Origin: Isurus oxyrinchus
Lineage: Eukaryota
DNA length: 64,000 nt
Assembly: GCA_026770705.1 (NCBI GenBank)
Contig: JANJGN010000052.1
Coordinates: 2,790,001-2,854,000, forward strand
Reading direction: 5' to 3'
Below the pieces are notes generated by a model that was given only the letters and a program-made list of their open reading frames with translations, had not been told where the DNA came from and searched no databases. Of this stretch, positions 7,587-49,317 are shown piece after piece. Within the stretch, counting starts at the first letter, position 1. Every line of letters starts with the position of its first letter. The translations under genes were made by a program, and so were the position numbers.

Positions 7587-7619
<33 letters not shown>

Positions 7620-10108: not shown

Positions 10109-10398
10109 GAGTGACGTCAGAGGGATGGTCTATGAAGGCGCTACCTCGGAGGGCCATCAGCAGCTCTTGTGTGGTTATTCCGTGTAGCTTTGAGTTTCCT
10201 TCCCACTCTTACACAGCACTGCACGGAGCTTGGTATAAATATTGGTATAGATGGAAATATACCATCACATACACCAAAGATTCCAATTATGGGGTGGCCA
10301 CATTCGTGGGACGTGCTAAAATAATCGGCGACTTGGAAGTGAAGAATTGTTTGGTGAGGATTGACAGTCTCAGAGCTGAAGACAGTGACGTGTATTAC
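10109..10398 (+). pseudogene. Siglec/MAG-like V-set exon A1, 3'-truncated by Gypsy sequence
   Basis: tttcAG acceptor; SSCVVIPCSFEFP..HGAWY..GRAKIIGDL..NCLVRI..EDSDVYY, then an abrupt switch to gag-like sequence. Confidence 0.85.
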
Positions 10399-11750
10399 AC
10401 CCAATTCTAAATCTTTTCACCAATTAGTCGTCCTCATGAAGATGTATTTTCAGCTGAAGCCGTGGGTAATAATGCAGAGGTTTAAGTTTAACTCCAGAGT
10501 AAGGGCCCAGGGAGAGTCCATCGCAACCTATACAGTGAAGTGGAAGCAGGTGACTGAGCACTGGGACCTCGGAGACACACTCAATGACATGTTGCGGGGC
10601 CGATTGGTTTGTGCCGTTCACCCCAACGCCATTCAGAGCCGTTTACTCGCAGAAGCCGACATCGATTTGAAGCGCACCATGGAAATAGCGCCAGGCATGG
10701 AAAGTGCTGGGAGAGACTGGCGGGATTTACAGGATGTACAACATGGCGCCAGTCCTCAGCTGGGACAGGAACCAACCACCGGGCGTGAGGCTCAAACTGG
10801 AGAGAGAGAGAGAGAGAGAGACAGCCGCCAAGCGAGAGACAGTCTCTGCCGCTCCAGAAACTAAAAGGCTTCGTGGGAGTATTTCAGCAGCAACTCCGAA
10901 GTTGGCCTGTTCTCGATGTGGGGGGCATTGAGCTCGTACCGGACACCTGCAGGTTCAAGGGGGCAGAAAGCCATCACTGCCACAAGAAAGGGGCGGGTAA
11001 TAAAGCAATGCAGGGTGAAATCGAGACAGCCCATCAGGCAGTGCACCAACATGATGGAAGTGAATAATATCACAGAGCCTGAAGCTGCTGATACCGATGT
11101 CTATTCCCTGTCCAATGTCACAGTGGTAAAAACTGAACCTATAACCATCACAACCCAAGTGAATGGGCAGCCACTAGTAATGGGGCAGATACGGGAGCCT
11201 CAGACACAGTGGTGGAAGAGCCCACATTTAAACAGCTAAATGAAGGAACCCAGACGCTGAATTTAGAGCAAACAATGGATCAGCTGAAGACACACACTGG
11301 AGAATCCATACAGGGAAAGGACCTCATCCCAGTACCTGTGTCCTACAGGCAGCAGACAGCCCAGCTTCCAGTGATCATAGCGACAGGTGAGGGCCCTAGT
11401 CTTCTGGGCCGAGACTGGTTCCAGAAAACCAAGCTCAGCTGCTCTGAAATGTTTCACTGGAGGAGTTGCTGAGTTGCTGGGGGAATATGAGAGTGTATCT
11501 CGGAATGAGTTTGAAGAATTGAAGCATCCTCACAGGCTGCAAGTGTCCCTCAGGTCAGAGTTGGTTCCACTGGAAAATCCTGAAGAGAAAGAAAGCGAAT
11601 TCTGTGCCGCTCTGAGCAAACTGAAGAAACAGTTGGCAGGGAAGACCCAACCATGTCCAATGTTCCAGGAGGAAGGCAAGAGATACAAGGAAGAGACTGA
11701 AGAGCTGAAGATTCAGCTGAATGAAACCAAAGAGGCAGTTACAGTATCAC
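10399..11750 (+). mobile_element. Degenerate Gypsy LTR retrotransposon internal fragment (gag-protease)
   Basis: QRFKFNSR..GESIATY..LNDMLRGRLVC, a degenerate CxxC zinc knuckle and GEGPSLLGRDW; frameshifted. Confidence 0.85.
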
Positions 11751-11759
11751 AACAATTTT

Positions 11760-12176
11760 ACAGAGCAGAAGGAGGCCATTCAGCCCGTCGAGCCTGTTAC
11801 ACAGGAACAGGAAGAGGCCCATTCAGCCCCCTCGAGACTGTTACACAGGAACAGAAGGGGGCCATTCAGCCCATTGAGCCTGTTACACAGATACAGGAAG
11901 AGGCCATTCAGCCTCCTCAAGACTGTTACACAGGAACAGGAGCAAGCCCATTCAGCCACTGATGTCTGTTACACAGGAACTGGAGGAGGCCCATTTAGCT
12001 CCTCAAGCCTGTTACACAGGAACTGGAGGAGGCCCATTCAGCCCCCTCGAGCCTGTTACACAAGAACAGGAGGAGGCCCATTCAGCCCCATTGAGCCTGT
12101 TACACAGAAAAAGGACGAGGCCCATTCAGCCACTGATGCCCGTTACACAGGAACAGGTGGAGGCCATTCAGCCCCT
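11760..12176 (+). repeat. ~43-bp minisatellite (GAGCCTGTTACACAGGAACAGGAGGAGGCCCATTCAGCCCCTC)
   Basis: Tandem copies visible. Confidence 0.9.
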
Positions 12177-13406
12177 TGTAGGGTGTGGTGGTGTGTGTCC
12201 GCTTCACCTGCGACTTCTGAGCCGTCTGAATCGCTCCCACTCCCTGGGTTCTAGACCTTGGACTTATTCGGGGCTTGTCACAAAGTGCAGCAGACAACTG
12301 GTTTTGGTGCAAGACAAAAACTGAGTTTACTGAAGTCACAAATGAACTTCTAACATTAGGATGACACTGAGATTATACAGACTTACAAAGTACACTGAGT
12401 TAAGAATAGGGAACACATGGCATAACGAGGGAGAATCACGCTACTAATGCCCTTACCCTTGTCCCACCCCCCATCCCTAACTAAATTGCACTAGGAGAGG
12501 TCAGGGGTCACGCTCACCAACCCAGGGTTCCTTGACAGGTGGAAATCCAGCCAGGTAAGCCGGTTGCAGTTTTGGGGGATGCTCTTAGTGTCCTCTGGGG
12601 CCTGTCATCCCCACGTGGTCCTGGTCTGTGGAATCTGTGAAGGGTCTTCAGTTGGGTGGATGGCGCGGTTGTGGGTGGTCGATCTTCATGGAGGGCAGCG
12701 GTTGTGGCCTTGTATCTTCGGTTGAGCCTGCCACCCCGTGCCCCTCACCGTGATGTTGCCTGTGGGCCTGCAAACCTCCAGATCTCCTTGCTTAAACTCT
12801 GTTTCAACCGCTCCCAACTGCTCACTGCCCTGTGTCAGCTTTCAACACTGCAACCCTTCTGCTGGCTGGTTTCTCTCCCAACTGACTGCCCAGTTATACT
12901 GCCTTTCGAGTTTCTTATCGCAATCCAAATCAAGGTTCGTTCTTTGTTTGTCTTTGGTGGGCTTCCCCAGGTGATTGATGTCTCGTTGTTGTTAATGGGC
13001 TCGCATGATGTTTATCATTGTCTTCCTGCCCAGTAACTAGTTTTGAACTGAAAGCCATTGTATGTGTGGAGTATTGATGGGTTCGCATAATTAAATTGCC
13101 GGCCTCAGAAGTTAGGAGCGATTATTGATGCAAGATTTAGATGGGCTTCAGTTGCGTGTGAAGTGAAGTCTTTCTCTGGGTTGATTGTATTAAAGGGAAG
13201 AATGCGTATTCTGTCTCCTCTCGTTGTCTGGTTTCAGGCCAAACATTCCACACTGCTCTCAATAAGCCCGGACATGTGCAGCCCCAGGCCTTCATGGGCC
13301 CAGCCTCCTGTCTGCAGGGTTTTCCACTTAACTCAGCAGTTTAAAGGTGCAAAAGTGATATCCTTGTTGATGATATGGAAAATGTGGGAATTTTGAGAAC
13401 CCTTAA
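12177..13406. mobile_element. Putative solo LTR-like element
   Basis: Termini TGTAGGG...CCCTT(A/C)A; the right-arm copy reads TGAAGGG...CCCTACA. No matching TSD. Confidence 0.4.
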
Positions 13407-13690
13407 AGAGATAGGGAGGGTTACAGGGGCTGGAGGAGGTTACAGGTATAGGGAGGGGTGTAGGGGTTGAAGGTGGTTACAGAGATGGGGAGGGTTGTGG
13501 GGGTTGAAGGTGGTTACAGAGATGGGGAGGGTTGTGGGGGTTGGAGGTGGTTACAGATATAGGGAGGGGTGTAGGGGTTGAAGGTGGTTACAGAGATGGG
13601 GAGGATTGTAGAGGCAGGTGGAGGCTGCCTTAGGGAGGGTTGTAGGGGCTGGAGGAAAGGGAGAGAGAGAGGAGGTTACAGATATAGGGA
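13407..13690 (-). repeat. 37-bp minisatellite (CTCTGTAACCTCCTCCAGCCCCTACAACCCTCCCTAT)
   Basis: Tandem copies visible. Confidence 0.9.
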
Positions 13691-13884
13691 GGGAGACAGT
13701 CAGAGAGAGAGCCTCCAGGAGATAGAGAGCGATAGAGAGATTGAGAGACAGACAGAGACTGAGAGAGGGAGAAGAGAGAAGGAGAGTGAGAAGACTGAGA
13801 GAGGGAGAAGAGAGAAGGAGAGTGAGAGAGAGACAGAACAAGTGTGAAAGATGGTGGAAGGGAAGAGTGGGGAGGTGTTGGCCT

Positions 13885-14230
13885 GATGGTATTTTCACTG
13901 GACCAGTAATCCAGAGACCCAGCGTAATGCTCCTGGGACCCTGGTTAGAATCCCACCACAGCAGTTGGTGGAATTTGAACTCAATAAAAACCTGGAATTA
14001 AAAGTCCGATGATGACCAGGAAACCATTGCCGATTCTTGTATTTGGGTCACAAATGCCCTTTAGGGAGGGAAATCTGCTGTCCTTACCTGGTCTGGCCTA
14101 CATGTGACTCCAGACCCACAGCAATGTGGTTGACTTTTAAAAAGTGGCCTCTGAACAAGGGCAATTAGGGTTGGGCAATAAATGCTGGCCTAGGCAGTGA
14201 TGTCCACATCACATGAAAGAATGAAATAAA
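13885..14230 (+). mobile_element. tRNA-derived SINE with LINE-derived tail
   Basis: B-box-like GGTTAGAATCCC; tail GGGCAATTAGGGTTGGGCAATAAATGCTGGCC matches the LINE 3' end at ~62270-62310. Confidence 0.75.
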
Positions 14231-14809
14231 AGGACAGAGAGGGACAGACAGAGTCGAGAGACACCCAGAATGAAAAAAACACAGTAAACACTGGAAAATA
14301 AACATTCTGGTCTGATCTGGTCTTGTATACCTTCAAATGGAACACCAGTAAAACAGGGAAATAAGAGTACTGGGCCAAACTGTTAGAGAGGGGCACATTT
14401 AGAGAGAGAGAGAGAGAGAGAAAGAGGGAGACACTGAAAGAGATAAGGACAAGGAAAGAAAGAGTGAGAGAGAGAGACAGACAGAGACACACAAAGAAGT
14501 AGAAAGAAAGTGATAGAGATGAAGCAGGAGAGAATGAGGAGAAAGATAGATAGATAGAGAGAGAGGATGGTAGAGAAAGAGAACGAGAGGAAAAGAGACA
14601 AAGGCAGAATGTGATGGAACACTGAATCCTTGTCTATGCGTTTTGAAATCCAGCCCAGAACTATCATTGGAAGATTCAGCGAGTGTCCAGTACAGGGGAC
14701 CCAGCCCAACCTTCTCATCCTGACCTTCCCAGTGGGGCTGAAGAGGGCAGAGAGGAAACCTTCCTCTGTTATTCTGTTGTCGAATAAACACAACAATTCT
14801 GGAACTCTG

Positions 14810-15410
14810 CCCTTTCTATCTCACGGATTAGAATATAAGGGGGCAGAGGTCATGCTTCAGTCTACATAAAGCCCTGGCTAGACCACACCTGGAGTCACTG
14901 TGAGACATTCTGGGCCCCACACCTTAGGAAGGATATATTGACCTCGGAGGGAGAGCAGTGTCAGTTTACCAGAGTGAGACCGGGACTCCAAGGGTTAAAT
15001 CACAAGGCGAGATTAAACACAAACTCGGCTTGTATTCCCTGGAAGTTAGAATGTTAAGCAGGAGATTTGATGAAAGTTCGCATGATATTAAGGGGAACAG
15101 ATCGGGGGCGATAAAGAGAAACCATTTCCCCTGGTTGGGGGGAGTCTGGGACTCGGGATCAGAGCCTAAAAAGGAATTAAATTAGGAAGTACAAAGGGTG
15201 GGAGAAATTTGGAACTCTCTTCCCCAAACAGGAACTGATGCACGATCAAGTTGTTCATTTTAAACCTGTGAGACTGATAGATTTTTGTTATCCAAAGGTA
15301 TTAAAGGAGATGGGACAAAGGCATATGGGGCTAGTTTGCAGATCAGCCATGAACTCATTGAATGGTGGAGCAGGCTCGAGGGGCCAAATGGCCTCCTCCT
15401 ACCCTTATGT
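14810..15410 (+). mobile_element. CR1 LINE 3' fragment
   Basis: EYKG-EVMLQ..RPHLE motif; tail GGCTCGAGGGGCCAAATGGCCTCCTCC. Confidence 0.8.
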
Positions 15411-16379
15411 AATAGAAACTTACCTGTCAGAAGCCAGTTTATGTTGATGTGAGTCTGAGTCGATGACTGAACCCAGTTGGTGACTTGTTCCATACAAAGC
15501 AAGAACGTTCATGCCCTTCAATGTTCCTGGATAAACCATGAACAAAGCTGGTGACAGACAGTCTCCACATGGTAAACACTGACCGATCAACACATGACAT
15601 GGCTGTTAACCCCTAAACCTCAGCGTAAATCAGTTCCCCCTCGAGGCCCCTTGTCCGAAATAAAAGCAACGCACACAATTTGTAAAATAGTAAGTGTCTG
15701 GCAGGAAGGAGGAGCAATGAGAGGAGTAAGGGGTTAGGGGGCGTGCGCTTCACCTGATTTGCCGACATAAGAACCAGCCCCTATGTTTTTGCTATGTTGT
15801 GTTGCGTCAATATGAACACATATTTGCACAAGGTGAAGGGCGTTGCGGAGGGACTGATAGTTCTCGGCGCCAGACAGTCAATGTCCCAGTGACCTTACTG
15901 CTGGTCCCAGGCCAGTGGGACAGGGAACATCGACACTGCAATATCCAGAAATGGGTGCGATACCACACAGCTACCCACCCGCGGCTGTCCCCTTCAAGTG
16001 TTTCAGGTATAAGAGCAGGAAGCTCCTCTAGTTACAAACCAAAGCATCAAAGCAGAGCCAGAAGATCAGAAGAGACAGGCAGAGATGGGAAGCTCCCAGA
16101 TGAAATGGCGACTTGTCTTGTTCACTCTGACTTTGCTGCTCTCCCTGCAGCTGAGTCACTTCTTCTCCTTGTCGAGGTTAAGCTAAGAGATGTCCCTCTG
16201 GGTGAGGTGTTTCTTGCACATGACTCTACGTCTACCACCCAGATAGACTGGTCACTTCCGCAGTTTGATATTATTATGTTCGTGCCTTTAATATTGTCGC
16301 CCTCTATGAATTTAACATCATTTCCTTCTGTCATTTCCCCTGAAATTCTCATTCTTGTTTTCAATCCCTCCTCAGCCAC

Positions 16380-16680
16380 TCCCTATCTCTGTAACCTCCT
16401 CCAGCCCGTACAACCCTCCCTATCTCTGTAAACTCCTCCAGCCCCTACACCCCTCCCTATCTCTGTAACCTCCTCCAGCCCCTACAACCCTCCCTATCTC
16501 TGTAACCTCCTCCAGCCCCTACAACCCTCCCTATCTCTGTAACCTCCTCCAGGCCTTACAACCCTCCCTATCTCTGTAACTTCCTACAGCCCTTACAACC
16601 CTCCCTTTCTCTGTAACCTCCTACAGCCTCTACAGCCCTCCCTATCTCTGTAACCTCCTCCAGCCCCGACAACCCTACCT
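16380..16680 (+). repeat. 37-bp minisatellite in intron 1 of the hepcidin duplicate
   Basis: Tandem copies visible. Confidence 0.9.
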
Positions 16681-16739
16681 AAATCACTGGTCTGAGTCTC
16701 ACTCCAGGGAATTCAGTCCCATAATGTAGATCAACGCTC

Positions 16740-17297
16740 CGTGCTGAGGGAGTGCTGCACTCTCAGAGGGTCAGTAGTGTGGAAGTGTTGCACTATTGGA
16801 GGGACAGTACTGAGGGAGTGCTATACTGTCGGAGGTCAGTACTGAGGGAGTGCTGCTGTGTCGAAGAGTTAGTACTGAAATAGAGCTGCACTGACGGAGG
16901 GACAGTACTGAGGGTGCGCAGTACTATCGAAGGGTTAATACTAAGGGAGTGCTGCAGTGTCAAAGGGTTAGTACTGAGGGAGCGCAACAATGTTGAATGA
17001 GACATTAAACTGAGTCCCCCGTCTGCCCTCTCGGGCGGGTGTGAAAGATCCCACAGCCACTATTTGGAGGAAGAGCAGGGGGAGTTCTCCCCGGTGTCCT
17101 GGGACCAATATTTATCCCTCACCCAACATCACCAAAAACAGATGATCTAGGCCATGATCACATTGCTATTTGTGGGATCTTGCTGTGCACAAATCAGCTG
17201 CCACATTTCCTACAGTGTGAGTGCACTTCAAAAACCTCCTTCAGTGGCTGTGAAATGCTTTGGGATGTGGTGAAAGGCGTTAGAGAAATGCAAGTCT
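16740..17297 (+). mobile_element. DeuSINE (SacSINE1/AmnSINE1-like) with internal 33-bp tandem expansion
   Basis: CAGTACTGAGGGAGTGCTGC..GAGACATTAAAC..AGATCCCACAGCCACTATTT..TGAAAGGCGTTAGAGAAATGCAAGTC. Family assignment is from recall of the consensus, not from a search. Confidence 0.75.
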
Positions 17298-18199
17298 GTC
17301 CTCCTCCCCCTCTCTCTCTCCTGTACCTCTCTCTCTCTCTCTCCCTCTCCCTCAATCCTCCTCTCACTTTCTCCCTGATAAATTCTTTCTTTTTGCAGGT
17401 TGACACTGCTTTAGGTTCTTCGACGATTGAGAAATCTGTGGATTCCCCGGACACGGTAGGTGGAAATTCATTCCTTATTTTAAGGTTTCTCCCTGCTCGT
17501 TTCTTCCACAGAAAGTTTTCTGATTTCAAGCTGATTTCAGTGGCAGTCTGTCTCGGTTATACTCAGGAGGCATGTTTGAAATCGAGCCCCCCCCCCCTTT
17601 TTTTGCAAAGCTGGGAAGAGACAATTCCAAGGAAGTGAACATATCCCCACAGGAATTTTAAATGTAACCCACGCCGGGAATAGTGAGAGGGAGACTGATC
17701 CAGCCTGGGAGTGAGTTAAAGAGAGGCTGGGAGTCGAGAGTCGGAGAGAGGGATGGAATGGGGGAGGGAGGGATTGGAAGAGAGAGACAGAGAGTGGGAC
17801 GGGGAGGGGTGAAAGGGAAAGAACATAGGTGGGAGAGAGTGACAGAGGGAGAAATTAAAGAAGAGATGCAGAGTGAGGGAAAGTGAAAAGGGAAGAGAGA
17901 TTGTCCAAGAGAGAGAAATTAACAGGGAAGGGAGAGTTACAGAGTGAGCGAAAGGTACAAAAATAGTGTGAGAGAGAGGGAGAGATACTGAGTGGGAGAA
18001 TGAGACAGGGAGAGAGAGAGAGAGAGAGACAGGAAAAGGGAGAGAGGAGAGAAAGATTGGGAGAGAGGGCAATTGAGAGGAAGAGTAGGAGAGAGAGAGA
18101 CAGGGAGAGGAGGAGTGGATGAGAGGAAGAGAGAGAGATATGGAGCAGGAGAACACCTCCTCCGGTCCCGATGTTCCTCCAAAATCTCTGACATGACTC

Positions 18200-19144
18200 G
18201 AAGACTTTCAACCAGTGAATAAAAATTGTTCCAAACCACCTGAGACCACAGCCCTCAGTTACTATTCAGCACTTCATCACCCATATCAAACCCTCACCCT
18301 ACCGCCCAGCATCGAACGGCAGGGCTGAGCAGGGCATCCAAACCTTTAAATCCAGGGTGAGAAAGATGGAAGGGGATTCCATCGGCATGAGATTGTCCCG
18401 GTTCCTCTTCACAAACTGGGCCAGGCCACAAACAACGACCAGCATTGGCCCTGCAGAACTACTAATGAAGAGACATCTCCGCACCCACCTGACCCTTATC
18501 CAGCCGGATTTAAAGGGGAGGCTGGAGAAAAGCCAAGAGACGCAGGAGACCAGGCACGATGGTCATGCTGGGAAAGAACTTTCACTGTGGGAGGTGCAGT
18601 CCTTGCGATGAACTATGGAGATGGGTCCAATTGGCTGTTAGGCGAGGTGAGTGCAGTAACTGGATCCCTCTCCTCTCATGTATCAGTAAACGACATGTGG
18701 ATCATTTCCCCAAAATAACGCTGGTCCCACAAGAAGAAATGAAGTCTTCATCTCCACTTGAGTCTGGGCCACATGTAGAGGACAGGTCCCAAAATTTGGA
18801 AGGAGAAACATTCGAGAAAGCCTCCTGAGAGACTTGATTTGTAAATAGTTATTAGTGTAATTAGTTCACTTGTTATTAAGTTTGTCAACTGCACTTTTTA
18901 AGTAAAGGGGGAAGGATGTGGTAAAGTGGAGTTCCATGTACAGTTAAGAGAATGCAAGTGGATAAACCATGTGACAGTGCTGCCCAATCATTGTACAGTG
19001 CGGGCTACTGGTTCACTGTAAGTCTAGAGCTGGAGGTGGGTGTGGGAACATGCAAAAATTTAGTGCTCTGCCCTCTTGCAATAAATAATCAGCTTGTTCC
19101 AATGTCGGTCTCTCTTGGTTATTGATAGCGAGCATCAACTAACA
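18200..19144 (+). mobile_element. Gypsy integrase C-terminal fragment, polypurine tract and 3' LTR
   Basis: PYRPASNGRAE..QTFK..RLSRFLF..PAELLMKRHLRT; PPT AAAGGGGGAAGGA at ~18905; TG...CA LTR with AATAAA. Confidence 0.8.
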
Positions 19145-19229: not shown

Positions 19230-20930
19230 AGATGGACAATCCAACATGTGATCACATTTCAGAGATGTGTAAGAATAATAAAGCAGTAATACTCAGGGAT
19301 TTTAACTACCCAAATATTAATTGGGACAGCTTTAGTGAGCAAGGTAGGGAGGGAGAAAAATTCTGAAGTTGCATCCAGGAGAAGATTTTTAGTCTGTGCA
19401 TAGAAAGCTCAACAAGGGAGGGGACAGTTCTGGACCTAATATATGGAAAAGCGCAGGGAAAGGTGGAAAGCGTATCAGTAGGGGAGATAGTGACTGTAAC
19501 TCAATTGGATTTAGGACAGTTATGGAGAAGGATAAGTTTGTGCTGGGAATAAAAATTCTAAACTGGGGAAAGGCTAATTTTACTAAGATGAGATATGATT
19601 GGGCCCAAGTGGACTGGGAGAAGCTCTTTGCAGATAAAACTGTGTCAGAGCAGTGGGAGGCATTCAAGGAGGGAATAGCGAGAGTACAGAGCAGATATCT
19701 TCCTGTAAAGACAAAGAGGGAGACCAAGTCTGGAGAACCCTGGAAGAAAAGGAACGTAAAGGTTAGGATTGAGAAAAAAGAGAAGCTTATGGCAGATACT
19801 GAGGGCTCAATACAGCAGAGTCCCTAGAGGAGTACAAATAGTGCAGAGGGGAACTGAAAAAGGACATTAGGAAAGATAAGCGAGTGCATGAGAAAGCACT
19901 GGTGGGTAGAATAAAGCAAAACCCAGAGGGGTTTTTTAAATATGTAAAGAACAGGAGAATAACTCGGTAAAGAGTGGGGCCGATTAGGGACTATCGAGGT
20001 AATGTGTGTGTGGACCTGGAAGACGTGGGTACAGTCCTCAATGAATACTTTGCATCAGTCTTCACAATGGAAAAGGATGATGCAGGTATAACATCAGGGT
20101 GGAGGACAGTGAAATATGAGAGGAAATTAACACAGAGAGAGGAGGTACTAGTGGGTTTAGTGGCCTGAAAAGTGGATAAATCCACAAGCCCAGATGAGAT
20201 GAATCCAAAGCTGTTGAAGGAGGAAAGGGAAGAGATATCAGGGGCCCTGGCAGTAATTTTCAAATCCTCTCTGGCCACAGGTGAGGTGCCAGAGGACTGG
20301 AGGATGGCTCATGTTGTCCCATTATTAAAAAAGGGAGGAAGGGATAGATCAGGAAATTACAGGCCAGTCAGTCTAACCTCGGTGGTGGGGAAGTTACTAG
20401 TAAGAATTCTGAAGGACAGAATGAATCTGCACTGGGAGAGACAAGGATTAATCTGGGATATTCAGCATGGATTTGTTAAGGGAAGGTCATGTTTGACAAA
20501 CCTGATCAAAGCTTTTGAGGAGGTAACCAGGAGTGTTGATGAGAGTAATGCCTTTGATGTGGTCGACATGGGCTGAGGAAGGCTTTTGATCAGGTGCCTC
20601 TTGGCAGAGAGGCCAAGAAAGTAAGAGCCCATGGGATCCAAGGCAAAGTGGCACGTTGGATCCAATATTGGCTGAGGCAGGAAGCAGAGGGTGATGGTGG
20701 AGGGATGTTTCTGTGACTGGATGTCTGTTTCCAGTGGGGTTCCACAGGGCTCAGTGCTGGGGCACTTGCTGTTTGTGGTGTATATAAATGAATTGGACGT
20801 AAATATAGGGGGAATGATCACGACGCAAATGGACTTCAACCTGGAAAAATGTGAGGTGATGCACTTAGGGAGGGAGTTGCTGACCAGAATGGACAAGATG
20901 GGCTAAATGGCCTCCTTCTGTCCTGTAAGT
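19230..20930 (+). mobile_element. CR1 LINE ORF2 fragment (endonuclease end and RT), degenerate
   Basis: GNYRPVSLTSVVGK, QHGFVKGRSCLTNL, SGVPQGSVLG; stops and frameshifts. Confidence 0.92.
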
Positions 20931-21120
20931 GTCTATGAGTCTATGAGTCCATGATGCACTATCGGAGAGTCAGTAGTAAGGATGTACTGCCTGTCAGGGC
21001 TCACTTTTTACCAGTTAAACACCAATGGTTTGTTTATAAACAAAGTGCAGTATGTGGGAGCTTGCTGTGCACATTTGATACTATTCCTGCTAATGTAGAA
21101 TGAAGGGTGTTTGTACTTAC

Positions 21121-21417
21121 ATAGCACAGTCAGTACGAGGGTCCGCTTCGATGAAACAGATGGATATCTCACTCTGCAGCTGAGAGTGTGTCCGTGGTGT
21201 TTGAGTGATGGGATCAGGGTCAGAACAGAAGTATAGGTCAGAGTGACACCATGCTGAGTTACAGTGTTTGAGACTGATCCAGGTACGTCAGTGGGAGTGT
21301 CCCAGGTTAAGACAGGTGCTGCTGTTCCATTGCACGTTGTGTTGAAGGTGCAGCTTACATCCACACGCTTTCCTGCAATAATTTCAGCAGGGAATATCGT
21401 GGGTTTATCTGTGAAAT
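21121..21417 (-). CDS. Siglec-like gene B1, exon 3: C2-set Ig domain (DFTDKPTIFPAEIIAGKRVDVSCTFNTTCNG..LTW..LSCRVRY..TLVLTVL)
   Basis: AG at 21419-21418, GT at 21120-21119, 297 nt, phase 1-1, open; has the extra Cys typical of Siglec domain 2. Confidence 0.88.
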
Positions 21418-22343
21418 CTAACAGACAGAGAATGGATCCTTTTAGAGAAATATAACGTGAAGCATCAGTTCAAATAGAAATCACAGTCCCACAAGAGAAA
21501 GCACTTTTACAAGGATGATATCAGAACTGAGAGGTTACAATGATCATTTTAGAATTGTCTCTTTTTACACTTGTTGAATCTCTGTCACTCAGATTAATAC
21601 ACTCTCACTCAGTGACCCTTGATTTGACCAGACTGGGTGAGGGTGGAGGAACAGCTCACAGCTCGGGGAGAACAGACTCAGCATTTGGAAAAGGATATAG
21701 AGACACTGGAGAGGGTGGTAAAAAGCTTCACAAGGATGATCTCAGCAATGTGAGGCTTTACCTATCAGGAGAGGATGTACAGGCTGGGTCTCTGTTCTCT
21801 TGAACAGAGAAGGTTGAAGGGTGACCTCATTTGATCTTTCAAGTAGTGAAAGGTTTTGATCGAGTAGACATGGAACAAATGAACAAAACCAGAGGCTGAC
21901 AATATAAGATCCTCACTAATAACTCCAATGGGGAATTCAGGAGAAACTTCTTTACCCAGAGAGTGGAGAGAATGTGTGCTTCAAGAATCACTTCATTGCC
22001 TGTGAATCGATTAAGGATCGTCCTGATGTGGTGAAAGGCGCTATAGGAATGCAAGTCATTCTGTTGTCAATTTGTGGGAATTTAAAACAAGATTAGAGAG
22101 CTTGATAAGATTGGATAACCTGATAACATTGATGGACACACTCAATCTATTTAATCATTGATATTAAAGTGAGTATTAGAGGTTGCTTTAGGACTGAACT
22201 GGAAGCTATCAGCAGGTTATTGAGAATCAGACAGTGTGTTACAATAAGCTTTGTTTTGTGTTAATATGTAAACGTCACAGTTTGTGTTATTTCCCATTGA
22301 GTGTTGGATGTGAATTGTTGAGTAATTATAACACAGCACTTAC

Positions 22344-22712
22344 CAGAAATGTGAAGCCGGGTTACAGGGTAATAGTTGTAGTTATTTGTACTTCCAAATT
22401 CTATTCTGAAAAAATAAGATCCTGCATCTTCCCGTCTGATGTTGTTTATAATCAGGGAACAGTCGCCATCTTTCAGGTCTCCAGACAGCTGGGTCCGATG
22501 GCGGAACCTTGGTAACTCGTGACTGTGATCCTTGGAGTGAAAGGCAAAGGGATTGTCGAATTTGTGTTTCTCGTTATTAAACCAGATTCCGACTCGTGGT
22601 TGGCTTTCCAAATGTGCTGGATAACTGTAATGACACGGAATCTGTACACACGAACCTTCCTGCGCTGTCACCTCTTGTGGAGTGTCACCTTTCCACTCTT
22701 GTGACAGTCCAA
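22344..22712 (-). CDS. Siglec-like gene B1, exon 2: V-set sialic-acid-binding domain
   Basis: 369 nt, phase 1-1, open; GSCVQIPC, GIW, GDCSLII and EDAGSYFFRIE with the essential Arg; canonical splice sites. Confidence 0.92.
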
Positions 22713-23635
22713 CTGGGGAGAGAAATATCTATATTTAATTCTGGATCCTCAATGTCAACTGAATCTTCATTGTCACTTCATTGTCTAAGGAATCTCTTTG
22801 GATCCTCATTGTCTAATGGATTATTTCTGATCCAAACCCCATATTGTTGTATTGTTGATTCCGATGCAGCATTGTAGACTGACTTGTCCCCAAGCTCAGC
22901 ACTGACCCTACTCCAGCAGAGACTGTGAAACACACTAACAAAGCGCCTCTAGCCTGAGCTCTGCCTGTGTCAAGAGCAAAGACAAATATACAAACTGAAT
23001 ATTGACACCTTTACACACAGACAGCTTTACCTTCCTTCTCTCTTTCAGTTATCTTGCTCCCTTATTGAAGTATCTAGCAAGGTGAGAATGGACAGGAAGT
23101 GTGACACTGAACAGCCTGTCTATTCTAGGAGCTGCTATGTTGTCTTCATGGGAAATTCTGACTAAAATCAGCAAAAGACACTAATTTCAGGCCATTGCGG
23201 TCAGACCCTCAGCATCAAGTTAGACTTCATCCCCTGAATTTTGCGTCCGATTTTCTACTCAAACTTTCACCTCCCCAAACCTCCACCCCGACCCCACAAG
23301 TGACTCGATGACCTACACTGGCTCCCAGTCCAGCAATGCCTCGATGTGATTATTTTTACACTTGATTTCCAATCCCTCCATTACTCCGCTACACTCCCTG
23401 TCTCTGTAACCCCCTCCAAACCTACAACCCTCTGTGATCTCTGCACTCCTCCAATTCTGCTGTCAGACAGGGAGTCAGTGTATATCAGTGAGCACAGGGG
23501 TGATGGGTGAATGGGACTTGGTGTGAGTTTGTACACTGGCACACTGCTGAATCGGTTTCCTATCAGAGCTCAATAAGAATGGTCTTATACAAACACTATT
23601 AACCATAAACCTGTCCAAGTTGACGATGATATTAC

Positions 23636-23675
23636 CTTGGAGAAGAGACAGGAGGAAGTAAGATTTCCCGATCAT
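23636..23675 (-). CDS. Siglec-like gene B1, leader exon (MIGKSYFLLSLLQ, phase 1)
   Basis: CAAG|GTAAT donor; joins the V exon in frame (LLQ-V-GLSQEW). Confidence 0.8.
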
Positions 23676-24484
23676 CGTCCACTCTCAGGTATTTCATTCG
23701 CTCTCAAACTGTGATAGAGAAAGGAGTTAATGAGACCTCACCTCTTGTCCGACAGCTCTCGAGAGATCAGAACTGCTTTTAGACAATGTCTTCACAGACC
23801 TAATTTGACTCTCTGTGGGATGATAGGTGCTCTGTAGAGAGTTACAAGGCTTTAAGGAAGAAAAACAACGATGAACTTGCATTTCTTTAGCACCTTTCAC
23901 CACCTCAGGATGTCCCAAAGCTCATGTCTCTGCACTTCCCTCATCCCTTGAGCTAGAAAGATGTTCTGTACAACAGACTTGAGCCTCACACCCAGATCTC
24001 AATAATCAGTAGAAATCTTTCAAAGGCATCAATCATTGGAATCTGTCTTTATAAAGTCACAACATCAACAAAGGACGGTGTTGGTGGTGGAAGTGAATTC
24101 CAATCATTCCGTTACTTACCCAGGACCTGTCCGACTGCTCGCCTGGGGTGGAACTGCCCACACGCTCTGCTTGGGCTGAATGACCTCTTCCTGTGCTGCT
24201 CCCTCTGTGTATTTAATTAGAAAGGGTTGATGTGTCTCTGTGAGACAAAATGAGGAAGTCAGATCAAAGTGACAGAGCAGCTGATGTTTTGAGTTTTTTG
24301 AAGCTGTTAACCCTTTGCGTTCTGGACTTGTGATGATATTTCTGCTCAAAAGTGGAAAGTCATTGACCAGGAATTTCTCCTGTGGGTCACTGGGTTTCGA
24401 ACCCTCTCTCACTCTCTGAGTGGATGGTCACCTGTTCGAGATTCATTTGGCAAAATTCAGGCTGGCAAATCAGATCAGCACTCA

Positions 24485-34452: not shown

Positions 34453-34826
34453 TTGGACTGTCACAAGAGTGGAAAGGTGACACTCCACGAGAGGTGACAG
34501 CGCAGGAAGGTTCGTGTGTACAGATTCCATGTCATTACAGTTACTTATCAAATTTCGTAGGGAGATCACGTGCGGAATCTGGTTGAAAGGAATAGATGGG
34601 AACCCACAGCCTAAATGGTCAATAGCCTTTCACTCCGAGGGTCACAATCACAGGGATCAAAGATTCCGCCATCATACCCGGCTGTCTGGAGACCTGAAAG
34701 ATGGCGAGTGTTCCCTGATTATAAACAACATCAGACGGGAAGATGCAGGACCTTATTTTTTCAGAATAGAATTTGACAGCAGGAATAGTTACAGCTACTA
34801 TCCTGTAACCCAGCTTCACGTTTCTG
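34453..34826 (+). pseudogene. Siglec-like gene B2, V-set exon with -1 frameshift at ~34571
   Basis: Split over ORFs 34404-34586 and 34514-34906; retains DAGPYFFRIE; canonical AG/GT. Confidence 0.9.
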
Positions 34827-35349
34827 GTAAGTGCTGTGTTATAATTACTCAACAATTCACATCCAACACTCAGTGGGAAATAACACAAACTGTGACGTTT
34901 ACATAATAACACAAAACACAGCTTATTATAACACACTGTCTGATTCTCAATAACCTGGTGATAGCTTTCAGTTCAGTCCTAAAGCAACCTCTAAAAATCA
35001 CTTTAATATCAATGATGAAAAGCATTAACTGTACCGACATCTTTCATTCTACATCAGCACTCCCTCAGCGCTGACCCTCTGACAGTGCAGCCCGTTCTCA
35101 GTATCCACATTCTCAGGCCACTCAAAGTGCTTCACAGTCGATAGAAGTTAATTGATCTTTATATGATTATTGCTGAATGAAGAGACAAGCTGTCTAAACT
35201 TCTCATATCGCAAACAGCATTCTCCACGGCAACACCTCCACCTATCAGAGACCACTTGCCAACCAATCAGCACTGTCTTTCCATTAAGTATAAATTGTTG
35301 TTCACTTTCTGTTGGTAATCGTGCGAACGGGGTTCTTGATTCCTGCCAT

Positions 35350-44655: not shown

Positions 44656-44958
44656 ACGTGAGGTGAATAGTGTCGATGTATTTAAGGGGAAGCTGGATAA
44701 ACACACGAGGGAGAAATGAATAGAAGGATATGGTGATGGGGTGAGATGGAGAAGGGGTGGGCGGAGACTCGTGTGGAGCAGAAACTCCAGCATGGAACAG
44801 ATGGGCCGAATGGCTCCTTTCCCTGCTGTAAAACGCAGGTAAAGTTTCAGTTGGAATTAATGAACAGGGCCTGTGTGAAATAGATTGCTAAGCAGTAGAT
44901 AAGGAGGGGAGAGGCTGTGGCATGGTGCAGGATGACCTTGCGTGAATGAGGCCAGGGT

Positions 44959-45075
44959 CTAATATCTACAGCAGAGACCACAAGTCTCATTTGGTTCTCT
45001 CCAATTACAGCAGTTACAGCAGAATCTGCAGAGCTGCTGTCTGTCCATTCTCTTCTGGCGCTGCAGCAAGGAGCC
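44959..45075 (-). CDS. HAMP: Hepcidin exon 3: GSLLQRQKR-MDRQQLCRFCCNCCNWREPNETCGLCCRY*
   Basis: cctgcttttccAG acceptor, phase 0; RxKR furin site; C-x2-CC-x-CC-xn-CG-x-CC hepcidin Cys pattern; TAG stop. Confidence 0.95.
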   Translation of the reverse strand, partial: GSLLQRQKRMDRQQLCRFCCNCCNWREPNETCGLCCRY

Positions 45076-45149
45076 CTGGAAAAGCAGGAGGACAATAGGT
45101 GAGAACATTCCTGAAAGAAAGAAGGCATCATTTCAATCAGGCGCGTCAT

Positions 45150-45770
45150 TTGAAGGAGGATGGCGCATTTCTATAGCGCCTTTCCCCTCCTCGGGATGGC
45201 CCAAAGTGTTCCACAGCTGAAGGAAGGACTTTTTCTGAAGTGAGCTCACCGCTGTAATGTAGGAAACGCAGCAGGCAATTCACGCACAGCAAGATCCCAC
45301 AAACAGAAATGTGATAATGGCCCCGATTTTCAGTTTTTTACCAATGTCAGTTGAGGGATAAATGTTTGCCCCAGGAAAGCAGACATAACTGCATCCCATC
45401 CAGCCCCCACCACACCCTCCACACATACCCCCAACTCCTGACGCACTTCATTTAAATTGTGGCCATGGAATCCTCTACATCCATCTGAGAGGGCAGATGT
45501 TGTCTCAGTTTAACATCTCATCTGAAAGACAGCGCATTCAACAGTGCAGCACCCCCTCAGTACTGACCCTCCGACTGTGCAGCACTCCCTCAGTACTGAC
45601 CGTCTGACAATGCAGCACCCCCTCAGTACTGACCCTCCGACTGTGCAGTCCCCCGCCGGTACTGACCTTCTGACAATGCAGCACTCCAAGACTGACTGTC
45701 TGACAATGCAGCACCCCCTCAGTACTGACCCTCCGACTCTCCTGCCCCCCCGCTGGTACTGACCCTCCGA
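45150..45770 (-). mobile_element. DeuSINE with 33-bp tandem expansion, in hepcidin intron 2
   Basis: Same SINE body as 16740-17297. Confidence 0.75.
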
Positions 45771-46050
45771 CAAATCGGTAATTTCTCAATTATGCCTGGT
45801 GGTCCTTTTAACTCAGAGCTGAGAGTTGCAGAGAATCGAGCAGACACCCTGAACTGACACTTGCAGTGCAAGTACTGGGAGCGCGCTGGTCATTATCTTG
45901 CTGCTGTCTGTGGGATCTTACTGTGCGCCAATGGCTGATTCTTTTCCCACAGTACATCAGTGACCTCACATGAAAGAAAAAAAGCACTTGATTGTCTGTG
46001 AAACAGTTTGGGACGTCCTGATGTGTTGGAAGGCGCTAGAGAAATGCAAG

Positions 46051-46199
46051 AGTTGACGTTTCGAGTCCTCATGACCCTTCTGAGGACTCGAAACGTCAAC
46101 TCTTTTCTTCTCCGCCGATGCTGCCAGACCTGCTGAGTTTTTTCAGGTAATTCTGTTTTTGTTTTGGCTTTCCAGCATCTGCAGTTTTCTTTGTTTTTA
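46051..46199. mobile_element. Short Penelope-derived insertion with inverted 5' end and 14-bp TSD
   Basis: TAGAGAAATGCAAG at 46037-46050 and 46200-46213; perfect 24-bp inverted repeat 46048-46071/46081-46104. Confidence 0.75.
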
Positions 46200-47469
46200 T
46201 AGAGAAATGCAAGTCCTCTTTGTCTTTCACTCGATCCTCTAAGGTGTCTGTTGATTAACCAGCCTCTCGGTGTTTGATGTAGGCCTGGTTATAAACAGGT
46301 AGAAGGATCAAATATCAAAAATGCTTTGGCTGACAGTCAAACCGATTGTGCATTCGGAGAGATTAGATACGGTCTGCACACAATGACTCCAGTCTCTGGC
46401 ACTGACTGCCGCCTGGGGTCTCCCTTCCACATAACACTCACAACTTGCATTTACACAGCGCCTCTGACATTGCAAAATGTCCCAGCCCACATTACCGGAG
46501 CGTAAATCAGAGAGAAGTCTAACACTGAGTCACATATGGAGATATTAGGGATAGGTGACCAAAAGCTTGGTCAAAGATGTCAGTTTTTAAGGAGCGTCTT
46601 AAAGGAGAGAGAGAGAGAGAGGCAGAGAGGTTAAGGGAGGGTATTCCGGAGCTCAGGGCCCCAGGCAGCTGAAGGCACGGCCACCAATGGTGGAGCGATG
46701 GGAATCAGGGGGACCCGGGAGATGCAGTAATGTCAGAGATTTTGGAGGAACATCGGGACCGGAGGAGGTGTTCTCCTGCTCCATATCTCTCTCTCTCTTC
46801 CTCTCTTCCACTCCTCCTCTCCCTGTCTCTCTCTCTCCTACTCTTCCGCTCAATTGCCCTCTCTCCCAATCTTTCTCTCCTCTCTCCCTTTTCCTGTCTC
46901 TCTCCCTCTCTCTCCCCTGTCTCCTTCTCCCACTCTGTATCTCTCCCTCTCTCTCACACTATTTTTGTACCTTTCGCTCACTCTGTAACTCTCCCTTCCC
47001 TGTTAATTTCTCTCTCTTGGACAATCTCTCTTCCCTTTTCACTTTCCCTCACTCTGCATCTCTTCTTTAATTTCTCCCTCTGTCACTCTCTCCCACCTAT
47101 TTTCTTTCCCTTTCACCCCTCCCCGTCCCACTCTCTGTCTCTCTCTTCCAATCCCTCCCTCCCCCATTCCATCCCTCTCTCCGACTCTCGACTCCCAGCC
47201 TCTCTTTAACCCACTCCCAGGCTGGATCAGTCTCCCTCTCACTATTCCCGGCGTGGGTTACATTTAAAATTCCTGTGGGGATATGTTCACTTCCTTGGAA
47301 TTGCCTCTTCCCAGCTTTGCAAAAAAATTGAGGGGGGGCTCGATTTCAAACATGCCTCCTGAGTATAACCGAGACAGACTGCCACTGAAATCAGCTTGAA
47401 ATCAGAAAACTTTCTGTGGAAGAAACGAGCAGGGAGAAACCTTAAAATAAGGAATGAATTTCCACCTAC

Positions 47470-47526
47470 CGTGTCCGGGGAATCCACAGATTTCTCAATC
47501 GTCGAAGAACCTAAAGCAGTGTCAAC
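47470..47526 (-). CDS. HAMP: Hepcidin exon 2 (VDTALGSSTIEKSVDSPDT), propeptide
   Basis: 57 nt, phase 0-0; ttctttttgcAG acceptor and ACG|GTAGGT donor. Confidence 0.88.
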
Positions 47527-48209
47527 CTGCAAAAAGAAAGAATTTATCAGGGAGAAAGTGAGAGGAGGATTGAGGGAGAGGGAGAGAGAGAGAGAGAGGT
47601 ACAGGAGAGAGAGGGGGAGGAGGACAGACTTGCATTTCTCTAACGCCTTTCACCACATCCCAAAGCATTTCACAGCCACTGAAGGATGTTTTTGAAGTGC
47701 ACTCACACTGTAGGAAATGTGGCAGCTGATTTGTGCACAGCAAGATCCCACAAATAGCAATGTGATCATGGCCTAGATCATCTGTTTTTGGTGATGTTGG
47801 TTGAGGGATAAATATTGGTCCCAGGACACCGGGGAGAACACCCCCTGCTCTTCCTCCAAATAGTGGCTGTGGGATCTTTCACACCCGCCCGAGAGGGCAG
47901 ACTGGGGACTCAGTTTAATGTCTCATTCAACATTGATGTGCTCCCTCAGTACTAACCCTTTGACACTGCAGCACTCCCTCAGTACTGACCCTCCGACAGT
48001 GCAACACTTCCACAGTACTGACCCTGTAACAATGCAGCACTTCCTCAGTACTGACTTCCGACAGTATAGCACTCACTCAGTACTGTCCCTCCAATACTGC
48101 AACACTTCCACACTACTGACCCTCTGAGAGTGCAGCACTCCCTCAGCACGGAGTGTTGACCTACGTTATGGGACTGAATTCCCTGGAGTGAGACTCAGAC
48201 CAGAGATTT

Positions 48210-48955
48210 AGGTAGGGTTGTTCCGGCTGGAGGAGGTTACAGAGATAGGGAGGGTTGTAGAGGCTGTAGGAGGTAACAGAGATAGGGAGGATTCTAGAGG
48301 CTGTAGGAGGTTACAGAGATAGGGAGGGTTGTAGGGGCTGTAGGAGGTTACAGAGATAGGGAGGTGAGTAGGGGCTGTAGGAGGTTAATGAGATGGGGGG
48401 GTTGTGGGGGCTGGAGGAGGTTACAGAGGTAGGGAGGGTTGTAGAGGCTGGAGGAGGTTACCAAAATAGATACTGTTGTAGGGGCCACAGTAGGTTACAG
48501 AGATAGGGAGAGTTATAGTGTGGAGAGGACGTTATAGAGTTCATGAGCATTGTAGGGGCTGGAGGAGGTTACAGTGATTCTGAGGGTCGTGGGGCCTGGA
48601 GGAGGTTACAGAGATAGGGAGGGTTGTAGGGTCTGGAGGAGGTTACAGAGATAGGGAGGGTTGTAGGGGCTGGAGCAGGTTACAGAGATAGGGAGGGTTG
48701 TAGGGTCTAGAGGAGGTTACAGTGATCATGAGGGTTGTGGGGCCTGGGGGAGGTTACAGAGATAGGTAGGGTTGTAGGGGCTGGAGGAGGTAACAGAGAT
48801 AGGGACAGTTGTAGGGGCTGGAGGAAGTTACAGAGATAGGGAAGGTTGTAGGGGCTGGAGGAGGTTACAGAGATAGGGAGGGTTGTAGGGGCTGGAGGAG
48901 TTTACAGAGATAGGGAGGGTTGTACGGGCTGGAGGAGGTTACAGAGATAGGGAGT
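48210..48955 (-). repeat. 37-bp minisatellite in hepcidin intron 1
   Basis: About 20 copies, versus about 8 in the left arm. Confidence 0.92.
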
Positions 48956-49155
48956 CGCTGAGGAGGGATTGAAAACAAGAATGAGAATTTCAGGGGAAAC
49001 GACAGAAGGAAATGATGTTAAATTCATAGAGGGCGACAATATTAAAGGCACGAACATAATAATATCAACCTGCAGAAGAGACCAGTCTATCTGGGTGATA
49101 GACGTAGAGTCATGTGCAAGAAACACCTCACCCAGAGGGACATCTCTTAGCTTAC

Positions 49156-49248
49156 CCTCGACAAGGAGAAGAAGTGACTCAGCTGCAGGGAGAGCAGCAA
49201 AGTCAGAGTGAACAAGACAAGTCGCCATTTCATCTGGGAGCTTCCCAT
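49156..49248 (-). CDS. HAMP: Hepcidin exon 1 (MGSSQMKWRLVLFTLTLLLSLQLSHFFSLSR), signal peptide
   Basis: 93 nt, phase 0; AGG|GTAAG donor; basic n-region and hydrophobic core; second in-frame ATG at 49233. Confidence 0.9.
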
Positions 49249-49317
49249 CTCTGCCTGTCTCTTCTGATCTTCTGGCTCTGCTTTGATGCTTTGGTTTGTA
49301 ACTAGAGGAGCTTCCTG

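What the first reader, a model, noticed from the sequence alone, without database searches (positions are those of the whole stretch)
44959..49248. Hidden intact three-exon hepcidin gene, absent from the ORF track
Seen: three phase-0 exons with canonical splice sites (49248-49156, 47526-47470, 45075-44959; introns 1629 and 2394 nt). They splice to 88 aa: MGSSQMKWRLVLFTLTLLLSLQLSHFFSLSR|VDTALGSSTIEKSVDSPDT|GSLLQRQKR-MDRQQLCRFCCNCCNWREPNETCGLCCRY. Established: HAMP genes have this signal/pro/mature exon layout (about 30/20/34 codons in human), an RxxR furin site and 8 Cys in this pattern. Inference: a functional hepcidin-family gene of a cartilaginous fish. Every exon is under 40 codons and buried in repeats, so annotation pipelines could easily miss it.
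Basis: partly seen in the sequence, partly recalled or inferred. Interest (0 to 1): 0.92.

Follow-up and report, generated by a model that had tools for sequence, protein, structure and literature searches.

The report
Expressed long-loop hepcidin gene copy
This is a real, intact, correctly spliced and strongly transcribed gene for a hepcidin-type peptide, but it is one of many near-identical copies in this genome, and its peptide differs from the classic iron hormone in its loop and its N-terminus.

Summary
Exon 3 passes the curated Pfam Hepcidin threshold (32.2 bits against 27). Public transcriptome-type contigs carry both predicted splice joints, to the base.

It is not a unique hidden gene. 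The scan found this before on other DNA of the same genome: 176 notes mention hepcidin, and several follow-ups describe the same long-loop form. This window also holds a second, truncated copy in inverted orientation. That copy has the promoter, exon 1, exon 2 and part of intron 2 (15625-18198, + strand) but no exon 3.

The 29-residue mature peptide keeps the eight cysteines, the RQKR cleavage site and six residues before the first cysteine. Its hairpin loop has 8 residues instead of 4-5 and carries an N-E-T sequon. The His3 and hydrophobic-4 residues of hormone-type hepcidins are absent. The promoter has a TATA box and an exact composite BMP/SMAD-type element. Whether the peptide acts as an iron hormone or in defence is unresolved. 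The species could not be checked because run names are coded.

The parts
49453..49467 (-). Composite BMP/SMAD-type element GGCGCCAGACAGTCA, about 205-219 nt upstream of the ATG
   Evidence: the pattern GGCGCCANNNNGNCV matches only twice in 64 kb (0.03 expected), both times in a hepcidin promoter. Its function is inferred, not tested.
49320..49325 (-). TATA box (TATAAG)
   Evidence: The RNA contig X4 record 16 reaches 49292, about 30 nt downstream.
49249..49292 (-). 5' UTR (minimum extent)
   Evidence: table 8: X4 record 16 covers 49154-49292 with 0 differences and continues into exon 2.
49156..49248 (-). Exon 1 coding part, 31 codons: signal peptide with a basic n-region and a 12-14 residue hydrophobic core
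   Evidence: 9-residue hydropathy peak 2.7 at residues 10-19. The splice donor is confirmed.
47527..49155 (-). Intron 1 (1629 nt, GT-AG, phase 0). It contains a 37-bp x 20 tandem array and a 33-bp array.
   Evidence: joint 47526|49156 (X1: 11 contigs; X4: 1 contig)..
47470..47526 (-). Exon 2, 19 codons (propeptide)
45076..47469 (-). Intron 2 (2394 nt, GT-AG, phase 0)
   Evidence: joint 45075|47470 (X1: 9 contigs plus 1 variant contig; X4: 1 contig; X5: 1 contig).
46130..46284 (-). Minor cassette exon inside intron 2 (155 nt, AG/GT). It lies in a high-copy repeat and gives a stop after 9 codons.
   Evidence: joints 45075|46130 and 46284|47470, in X1 only..
44959..45075 (-). Exon 3 coding part: end of the propeptide, RQKR convertase site, 29-residue mature peptide with 8 Cys, and stop TAG at 44961-44959
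   Evidence: (Pfam Hepcidin, 32.2 bits). (bass hepcidin 1S6W, with a 4-residue insertion in the loop).
44707..44958 (-). 3' UTR (minimum extent). Its distal part is repeat-derived.
   Evidence: table 8: X4 record 10 covers 44707-44995 with 0 differences. The poly(A) site was not determined.
15625..18198 (+). Truncated inverted duplicate: promoter with the same BMP-type element (15866-15880), exon 1 copy (16085-16177), exon 2 copy (17399-17455) and 740 nt of intron 2. It has no exon 3.
   Evidence: Both exons are 100% identical. Unique non-coding DNA differs by 1.7%.

Best explanation
This is an intact, transcribed member of the hepcidin (HAMP) family. It is one copy of an amplified 'long-loop' hepcidin subfamily that lies among CD22/Siglec-like genes.

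Shown here:
- Three phase-0 exons are spliced exactly as predicted.
- Exon 1 encodes a signal-peptide-like leader.
- Exon 3 encodes an RQKR convertase site followed by a 29-residue peptide.
- The peptide has the eight hepcidin cysteines.
- A TATA promoter carries an exact composite BMP/SMAD-type element.

Inferred mechanism: BMP/SMAD-driven transcription, probably in liver, is followed by secretion. A furin-type cut after RQKR then releases a four-disulfide hairpin peptide. Its tip loop has 8 residues instead of 4-5 and may be N-glycosylated at N-E-T.

The target of the peptide is not established. I lean slightly (about 45%) towards a retained or dual iron-hormone role on ferroportin.
- The promoter element is of the iron-sensing type.
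- The N-terminal arm has the right length, and Leu6, Arg8 and Phe9 sit where hormone-type hepcidins have them.
- The net charge is only about +1, which is weak for a membrane-active peptide.

A pure defence or other role gets about 35%. The confidence given (0.85) is for the gene being a real, intact, expressed hepcidin-family member, not for the peptide's target.
For: - Gene structure and translation.
- Family: Pfam Hepcidin at 32.2 bits, above the cut-off of 27, E 1.3e-7. The best solved relative is bass hepcidin 1S6W, with a 4-residue loop insertion.
- Uniqueness: the cysteine pattern occurs once in the window.
- Splicing: the joints 45075|47470 and 47526|49156 have GT..AG ends in X1 and X4. 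The first joint is also in X5, from another organism and study.
- Transcription: X1 exon bins have summed depths of 175,000-840,000, against roughly 400-1,400 in unique intron bins. Intron contigs sit at depth about 650-1,200, consistent with pre-mRNA.
- Promoter: the BMP-type element matches twice against 0.03 expected, both times in a hepcidin promoter. Human HAMP has BMP-responsive elements at -84/-79 and -2255/-2250 (PMC3879105).
- Neighbourhood: Ig_CD22 and V-set exons lie next door.
- Mature peptide: 29 residues, 8 Cys, net charge about +0.4 at pH 7 as computed with free cysteines.
- Comparison: published sea bass Hamp1 and Hamp2 peptides also have six residues before the first Cys and a 5-residue loop (PMC5665920).
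Against: - No peptide was detected and no activity was tested.
- His3 and the hydrophobic residue 4, present in the published human and teleost hormone-type hepcidins compared here, are Arg and Gln in this peptide.
- No TTCNNNGAA STAT-type site lies within 470 nt upstream.
- Many copies exist, as is usual for defence-type hepcidins in teleosts (PMC6240063).
- The majority junction contig in X1 carries Met50 where the window has Thr50. The main expressed form is therefore another allele or copy.
- Intron contigs differ from this copy by about 1.2%, which is close to the 1.7% between the two copies in this window.
- All runs are only guessed to be RNA. Contig depths are not a proper expression measure.
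- The single-sequence AlphaFold2 model was helical and of low confidence, so the fold is unconfirmed.
Confidence: 0.85

Rival explanations
1. It is a defence-type or otherwise neofunctionalised paralogue. Like teleost Hamp2, the amplified long-loop copies would have left iron control to a separate canonical hepcidin elsewhere in the genome. They would act as antimicrobial or immunomodulatory peptides.
For: - The His3/hydrophobic-4 motif is lost.
- The CRFCCNCC core is identical to the published sea bass Hamp2 core (PMC5665920).
- The copy number is high and the genes sit in an immune-receptor cluster.
- Teleost Hamp2 genes are lineage-specific expansions with antimicrobial activity (PMC6240063).
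- Earlier follow-ups on other copies reached this reading. That is not independent evidence.
Against: - The net charge is only about +1. In croaker, arginine-poor Hamp2 peptides had no antibacterial activity (PMC6240063).
- The promoter keeps an iron-pathway-type BMP element and has no STAT-type site nearby.
- No canonical hepcidin has been reported in this genome by the scan so far. Only part of the genome has been read.
Confidence: 0.35
2. This particular copy is silent or redundant. The RNA contigs would come from near-identical paralogues or alleles elsewhere, and this locus would simply be an intact duplicate carried along by segmental duplication of the Siglec cluster.
For: - Exons 1-2 are 100% identical in the second copy in this window.
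- The scan notes many further copies.
- The dominant X1 junction contig has Met50, not the window's Thr50.
- At 47936 and 48097 the X1 letters equal those of the truncated copy.
- An X1 contig leaves the window sequence at 44709 in the 3' UTR.
Against: - Junction contigs with the window's own Thr50 form exist in X1 (9 contigs) and X4.
- X4 record 10 matches 289 nt of the exon 3 end and 3' UTR without a difference. X1 records match intron 2 with 1 difference in 340 nt and 1 in 221 nt.
- The promoter, splice sites and reading frame are all intact.
Confidence: 0.2
3. The match is a chance arrangement of short open frames, or a decayed pseudogene.
For: All exons are short. The large protein searches gave no hits.
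Against: - The Pfam score is above the curated threshold.
- Both splice joints are found to the base in RNA-type contigs.
- The frame, convertase site and eight Cys are intact.
- The blank searches are explained by the 38-residue query and by the tools' limits.
Confidence: 0.01

Closest known systems
Hormone-type hepcidin (human HAMP hepcidin-25; teleost Hamp1)
   Same: - Pfam Hepcidin family.
- Three-exon gene with the mature peptide in exon 3.
- RX(K/R)R site.
- Eight Cys as C-x2-CC-x-CC...C-x2-CC.
- Six residues before the first Cys.
- Aliphatic residue 6 and aromatic residue 9.
- BMP-responsive-type promoter element.
- Siglec (MAG/CD22-type) genes next door.
   Different: - Residues 3-4 are Arg-Gln, not His plus Phe/Leu/Ile.
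- The loop between Cys5 and Cys6 has 8 residues with an N-E-T sequon, against 4-5.
- No STAT-type site lies near the promoter.
- The gene is present in many copies rather than one.
Teleost Hamp2-type (antimicrobial) hepcidins
   Same: - The core CRFCCNCC and the tail CG-x-CCR-aromatic are nearly identical to sea bass Hamp2 (PMC5665920).
- There is no His3 motif.
- The family is multi-copy.
   Different: - Hamp2 is reported only in percomorph teleosts (PMC6240063). Any likeness would therefore be convergent, not shared descent.
- The loop here is longer and the charge lower.
- Leu6 is kept here, where sea bass Hamp2 has Gly.
Nurse shark plasma hepcidin (proteomics, PMC9207270)
   Same: It is a cartilaginous-fish hepcidin detected as a protein. 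It had no orthologue in a shark genome annotation, which is the same 'missed by annotation' situation.

Membership tests
Hepcidin family (Pfam PF06446) | Profile match above the curated gathering score | tested here: met
   32.2 bits against a cut-off of 27, E 1.3e-7. Exon 3 residues 5-37 align to profile positions 24-52 of 53.
Hepcidin family (Pfam PF06446) | Eight cysteines spaced C-x2-CC-x-CC-loop-C-x2-CC | tested here: met
   The loop has 8 residues where the published peptides have 4-5.
Hepcidin family (Pfam PF06446) | Proprotein-convertase site RX(K/R)R directly before the mature peptide | tested here: met
   QRQKR|MDRQQLC... Cleavage itself is not testable here.
Hepcidin family (Pfam PF06446) | N-terminal signal peptide | tested here: inconclusive
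   a basic n-region (K7, R9) and a hydrophobic core at residues 10-21. No SignalP-type predictor was available.
Hepcidin family (Pfam PF06446) | Three-exon gene, transcribed and spliced, with the mature peptide wholly in exon 3 | tested here: met
Hepcidin family (Pfam PF06446) | Beta-hairpin fold with four disulfides | tested here: inconclusive
   the single-sequence AlphaFold2 model is helical, with pLDDT 72.5 and pTM 0.39. It is not trustworthy for a disulfide-rich 38-mer.
Hepcidin family (Pfam PF06446) | Conserved neighbourhood beside MAG/CD22-type Siglec genes (human 19q13.12, from general knowledge) | tested here: met
   Ig_CD22 at 42.9 bits and V-set exons at 22264-22728 and 34481-34903. 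USF2 was not looked for and not seen.
Iron-hormone type hepcidin (HAMP / Hamp1) | N-terminal x-x-His-(Phe/Leu/Ile)-x-(Ile/Leu)-Cys arm needed for ferroportin binding | tested here: not met
   the arm is M-D-R-Q-Q-L-C. The length and Leu6 are kept. His3 and the hydrophobic residue 4 are absent. Compare QSHLSL in sea bass Hamp1.
Iron-hormone type hepcidin (HAMP / Hamp1) | BMP-responsive element in the promoter | tested here: met
   as a sequence motif only. One search gives the human elements.
Iron-hormone type hepcidin (HAMP / Hamp1) | Proximal STAT3 site | tested here: not met
   no TTCNNNGAA lies between 49249 and 49720.
Iron-hormone type hepcidin (HAMP / Hamp1) | Binds and down-regulates ferroportin | not testable with these tools
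   The species' ferroportin is not in the window.
Teleost Hamp2-type hepcidin | Falls in the percomorph Hamp2 clade | not tested
   No homologue set could be fetched. By taxon range (PMC6240063) membership by descent is unlikely.

The most novel reading that the evidence does not exclude
The long-loop form, with Arg3-Gln4 and possibly an N-glycan, is the only hepcidin type of this lineage and is its ferroportin ligand under BMP control. The His3/Phe4 arm regarded as essential would then be an innovation of bony vertebrates. The ancestral jawed-vertebrate hepcidin-ferroportin contact would have used other residues, and the gene would have been amplified many-fold together with a Siglec cluster.
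Probability: 0.2. Interest if true: 0.75.

Novelty: new variant of a known kind. Interest (0 to 1): 0.45.

Why it matters
Hepcidin is the master iron hormone of vertebrates. Reviews state that it has no known antecedent before fish, and that the ferroportin cysteine it binds first appears in cartilaginous fish (PMC8235187). If the source is a shark, as earlier scan notes say, these genes sit at the base of that system. They would show what an early-branching hepcidin looks like. They would also show whether BMP control of the promoter predates the split from bony vertebrates, and whether the N-terminal arm is as universal as assumed. On the practical side, short-exon peptide genes such as this one may be missing from some shark annotations (PMC9207270), so iron-biology comparisons may be working from incomplete gene sets. 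For this window alone the added value is modest, because the scan has already described the same gene type on other DNA.

Tried and rejected
- The search for homologous proteins, run on the 57-residue open frame that contains exon 3 and scored on residues 18-57, found no candidate. Published teleost hepcidins share four 5-residue words with the query, so this blank says nothing.
- The search of protein representatives with exon 3 gave 0 hits at E<=0.001. A 38-residue query cannot reach significance in 1.8 billion proteins.
- The protein-atlas search gave a best score of 0.76 to an unrelated plant cluster. This is uninformative.
No orthologous loci or copy census could be fetched.
- Structure prediction on exon 3 alone gave a helical, low-confidence model. 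I ran no fold search on it.
- I first thought that the 100% identity of exons 1-2 between the two copies showed selection. Measured against unique non-coding DNA (1.7% different) the probability is only about 0.075, so I dropped the claim.
- I looked for a Siglec tail exon that the truncated copy could splice onto, as reported elsewhere in the scan. No tyrosine-motif exon lies on the + strand downstream, and the neighbouring Siglec is on the opposite strand.
- The species was not identified because run organisms are coded.
Full report
**Observation.** The three exons are in the sequence exactly as described. Exon 1 (49248-49156, minus strand) starts at an ATG in a good Kozak context and ends at ...AGG|gtaag. 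Exon 2 (47526-47470) lies between ...tttgcag| and |gtaggt. Exon 3 (45075-44959) follows ...ttttccag| and ends in TAG. Both introns are phase 0 and are 1629 and 2394 nt long. A six-frame regex search finds the hepcidin cysteine pattern only at this one place in the 64-kb window. ORFs listed over these exons are in other frames, so the gene is indeed invisible to an ORF track. That step is left out.

**Family.** Exon 3 alone hits Pfam Hepcidin (PF06446) at 32.2 bits, above the curated cut-off of 27, with E 1.3e-7. Among solved structures the only match is bass hepcidin 1S6W (E 0.24). It aligns with a four-residue insertion in the loop. Exon 1 has a basic start and a hydrophobic core typical of a signal peptide, but no dedicated predictor was available.

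**Expression and splicing.** The look-up of sequencing runs returned 16 coded runs. I laid four of them on window:44670-49420. X1 and X4 are organism A, from one sample and one study. X5 and X7 are organism B, from two other studies.
- The joint 45075|47470 skips 2394 nt with GT..AG ends on the coding strand. In X1 it is carried by nine contigs, plus one contig with a single-letter variant. It is also in one X4 contig and one X5 contig.
- The joint 47526|49156 skips 1629 nt and is carried by eleven X1 contigs and one X4 contig.
- In X1 the exon bins have summed word depths of about 175,000-840,000. Unique intron bins have about 400-1,400, and intron contigs sit at 650-1,200. This is what a very abundant mRNA with its pre-mRNA would give.
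- Contig depths are crude, and the runs are only guessed to be RNA. The spliced joints are the argument that they are.
- X4 record 16 extends the 5' UTR to at least 49292, about 30 nt below a TATAAG box at 49325-49320.
- X4 record 10 covers 44707-44995 without a difference, so the 3' UTR is at least 250 nt long.
- Organism B contigs are about 92% alike in the intron. The window therefore belongs to organism A.

**Not copy-specific.** The majority junction contig in X1 (depth 13,928 against 2,475) has A for G at 47471 on the + strand. This changes codon 50 from ACG (Thr) to ATG (Met). A minor form changes Val32 to Gly. X1 intron contigs differ from this copy by roughly 1.2%. At least two sequence forms are therefore expressed, and the dominant one is another allele or copy. 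A minor isoform includes a 155-nt cassette exon (46130-46284). It lies in a high-copy repeat and brings a stop after nine codons.

**A second, truncated copy and a palindrome.** Self-comparison shows a large inverted duplication. The left arm runs from about 9.5 to 18.2 kb (+) and the right arm from about 52.8 to 46.7 kb (-). An inner pair lies at 22150-24398 and 35020-32981. The left arm carries the hepcidin promoter, exon 1 (16085-16177) and exon 2 (17399-17455), both 100% identical to the intact gene. It also carries 740 nt of intron 2, and the homology ends at 18198. No second exon 3 exists anywhere in the window. A reverse-transcriptase fragment and an integrase-like ORF (unconfirmed: no Pfam hit) lie downstream of the break. 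Unique non-coding DNA of the two copies differs by 1.7% (30 of 1755). The exon identity is therefore not significant by itself (P about 0.075).

**Neighbourhood.** The flanking genes are Siglec-like.
- A V-set exon that also matches the CD22 first-Ig model lies at 22264-22728 (-).
- Its mirror lies at 34481-34903 (+).
- A C2-set exon lies at 21011-21469 (-).
- Weaker V-set exons lie at 51981-52343 (-) and 10000-10407 (+).

In humans HAMP lies next to MAG and CD22. That is general knowledge and was not tested here. The position is thus consistent with orthology. Here the intact hepcidin gene and the Siglec gene B2 converge on each other.

**Promoter.** The sequence GGCGCCAGACAGTCA (49467-49453) fits the composite SMAD1/5-SMAD4 pattern GGCGCCANNNNGNCV. 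I took that pattern from memory of the BMP-response literature. It occurs twice in the window against 0.03 expected, and both occurrences are in hepcidin promoters. These two are copies of one sequence, so they count as one event. Human HAMP has BMP-responsive elements at -84/-79 and -2255/-2250 and a STAT site at -72/-64 (PMC3879105). No TTCNNNGAA lies within 470 nt upstream here. First readers noted the same promoter features on other copies.

**The peptide.** After RQKR the mature peptide has 29 residues. It has six residues before the first Cys, then the core CRFCCNCC, an eight-residue loop with an N-E-T sequon, and the tail CGLCCRY. I compared it with published peptides.
- It shares the arm length, Leu6, Arg8 and an aromatic residue 9 with hormone-type Hamp1.
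- It shares the core with sea bass Hamp2.
- It lacks His3 and the hydrophobic residue 4.
- Its loop is about twice the usual 4-5 residues.
- Its net charge is only about +1. In croaker, arginine-poor Hamp2 peptides were not antibacterial (PMC6240063).

**Interpretation.** I am confident (about 0.85-0.9) that this is a real, intact hepcidin-family gene whose exact exon structure is transcribed. The role of the peptide is open.
- I lean slightly towards a retained or dual iron-hormone role (about 45%). The reasons are the promoter element, the preserved arm length and hydrophobic positions, the weak charge, and the fact that the hairpin tip is the part of hepcidin least likely to touch ferroportin. 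That last point is from my own knowledge of the published complex and was not tested here.
- A defence-type role (about 35%) is favoured by the lost His3 motif and by the copy number.

**Relation to earlier scan work.** The scan found this before on other DNA of the same genome. 176 notes mention hepcidin. Several follow-ups describe the same long-loop gene as spliced and highly transcribed. Others describe truncated copies spliced onto Siglec tail exons. My results agree on the gene. This window adds four things: the exact joints, a truncated copy that faces a Siglec gene on the opposite strand and so cannot make that chimera, the palindromic layout, and the Thr50/Met50 forms.

**Limits.** The species is not identified because names are coded. 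No homologues could be fetched. The fold model is unusable.

Noticed in passing
window 15625-18198 (+): Truncated inverted duplicate of the hepcidin gene. It has the promoter, exons 1 and 2 (100% identical to the intact gene) and the start of intron 2, but no exon 3. An integrase-like ORF (18219-18608; no Pfam hit) and a reverse-transcriptase fragment (20169-20573) follow the break.
   Followed up: partly
window about 9500-18200 (+) against 52800-46700 (-), and 22150-24398 against 35020-32981: The window is organised as a large interrupted palindrome. Each arm carries a Siglec V-type exon, retroelement debris, a hepcidin 5' part and an inner Siglec gene (B1 or B2). The left arm lacks about 8 kb that includes hepcidin exon 3.
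   Followed up: partly
window 46130-46284 (-): Minor cassette exon of 155 nt with AG/GT sites, inside a high-copy repeat in intron 2. It was seen only in X1 and brings a stop after nine codons, so it is probably a non-productive exonised repeat.
   Followed up: yes
window 47471 and 47525: The RNA contigs carry Thr50Met (ACG>ATG at a CpG; the majority form in X1, also in X5) and Val32Gly (a minor form). Both window copies have Thr50 and Val32, so another allele or paralogue is the main expressed form.
   Followed up: partly
window 1-8980 and 53400-54720: Purine-rich satellite with a period of 70-72 nt (about 105 copies, 82% alike, GC skew near +0.9). A shorter mirror-image block lies in the right arm and is cut by an N gap at 54725-54854.
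   Followed up: partly
window 48209-48954, 49698-49920, 16379-16681, 13403-13656: A 37-bp tandem repeat family flanks hepcidin exon 1 on both sides (in intron 1 and upstream of the promoter) and recurs in the left arm. 33-bp arrays at 45541-45773 and 47941-48146 recur at 24.5-25.1 kb, 32.6-32.9 kb, 38.7-39.0 kb, 55.0-55.2 kb and 57.3-57.7 kb.
   Followed up: no
window 22264-22728 (-) and 34481-34903 (+): Siglec V-set exons with the ...YFFRIEF... arginine motif. The B1 exon also matches the CD22 first-Ig Pfam model above its cut-off, whereas B2 matches it more weakly over a shorter stretch.
   Followed up: partly
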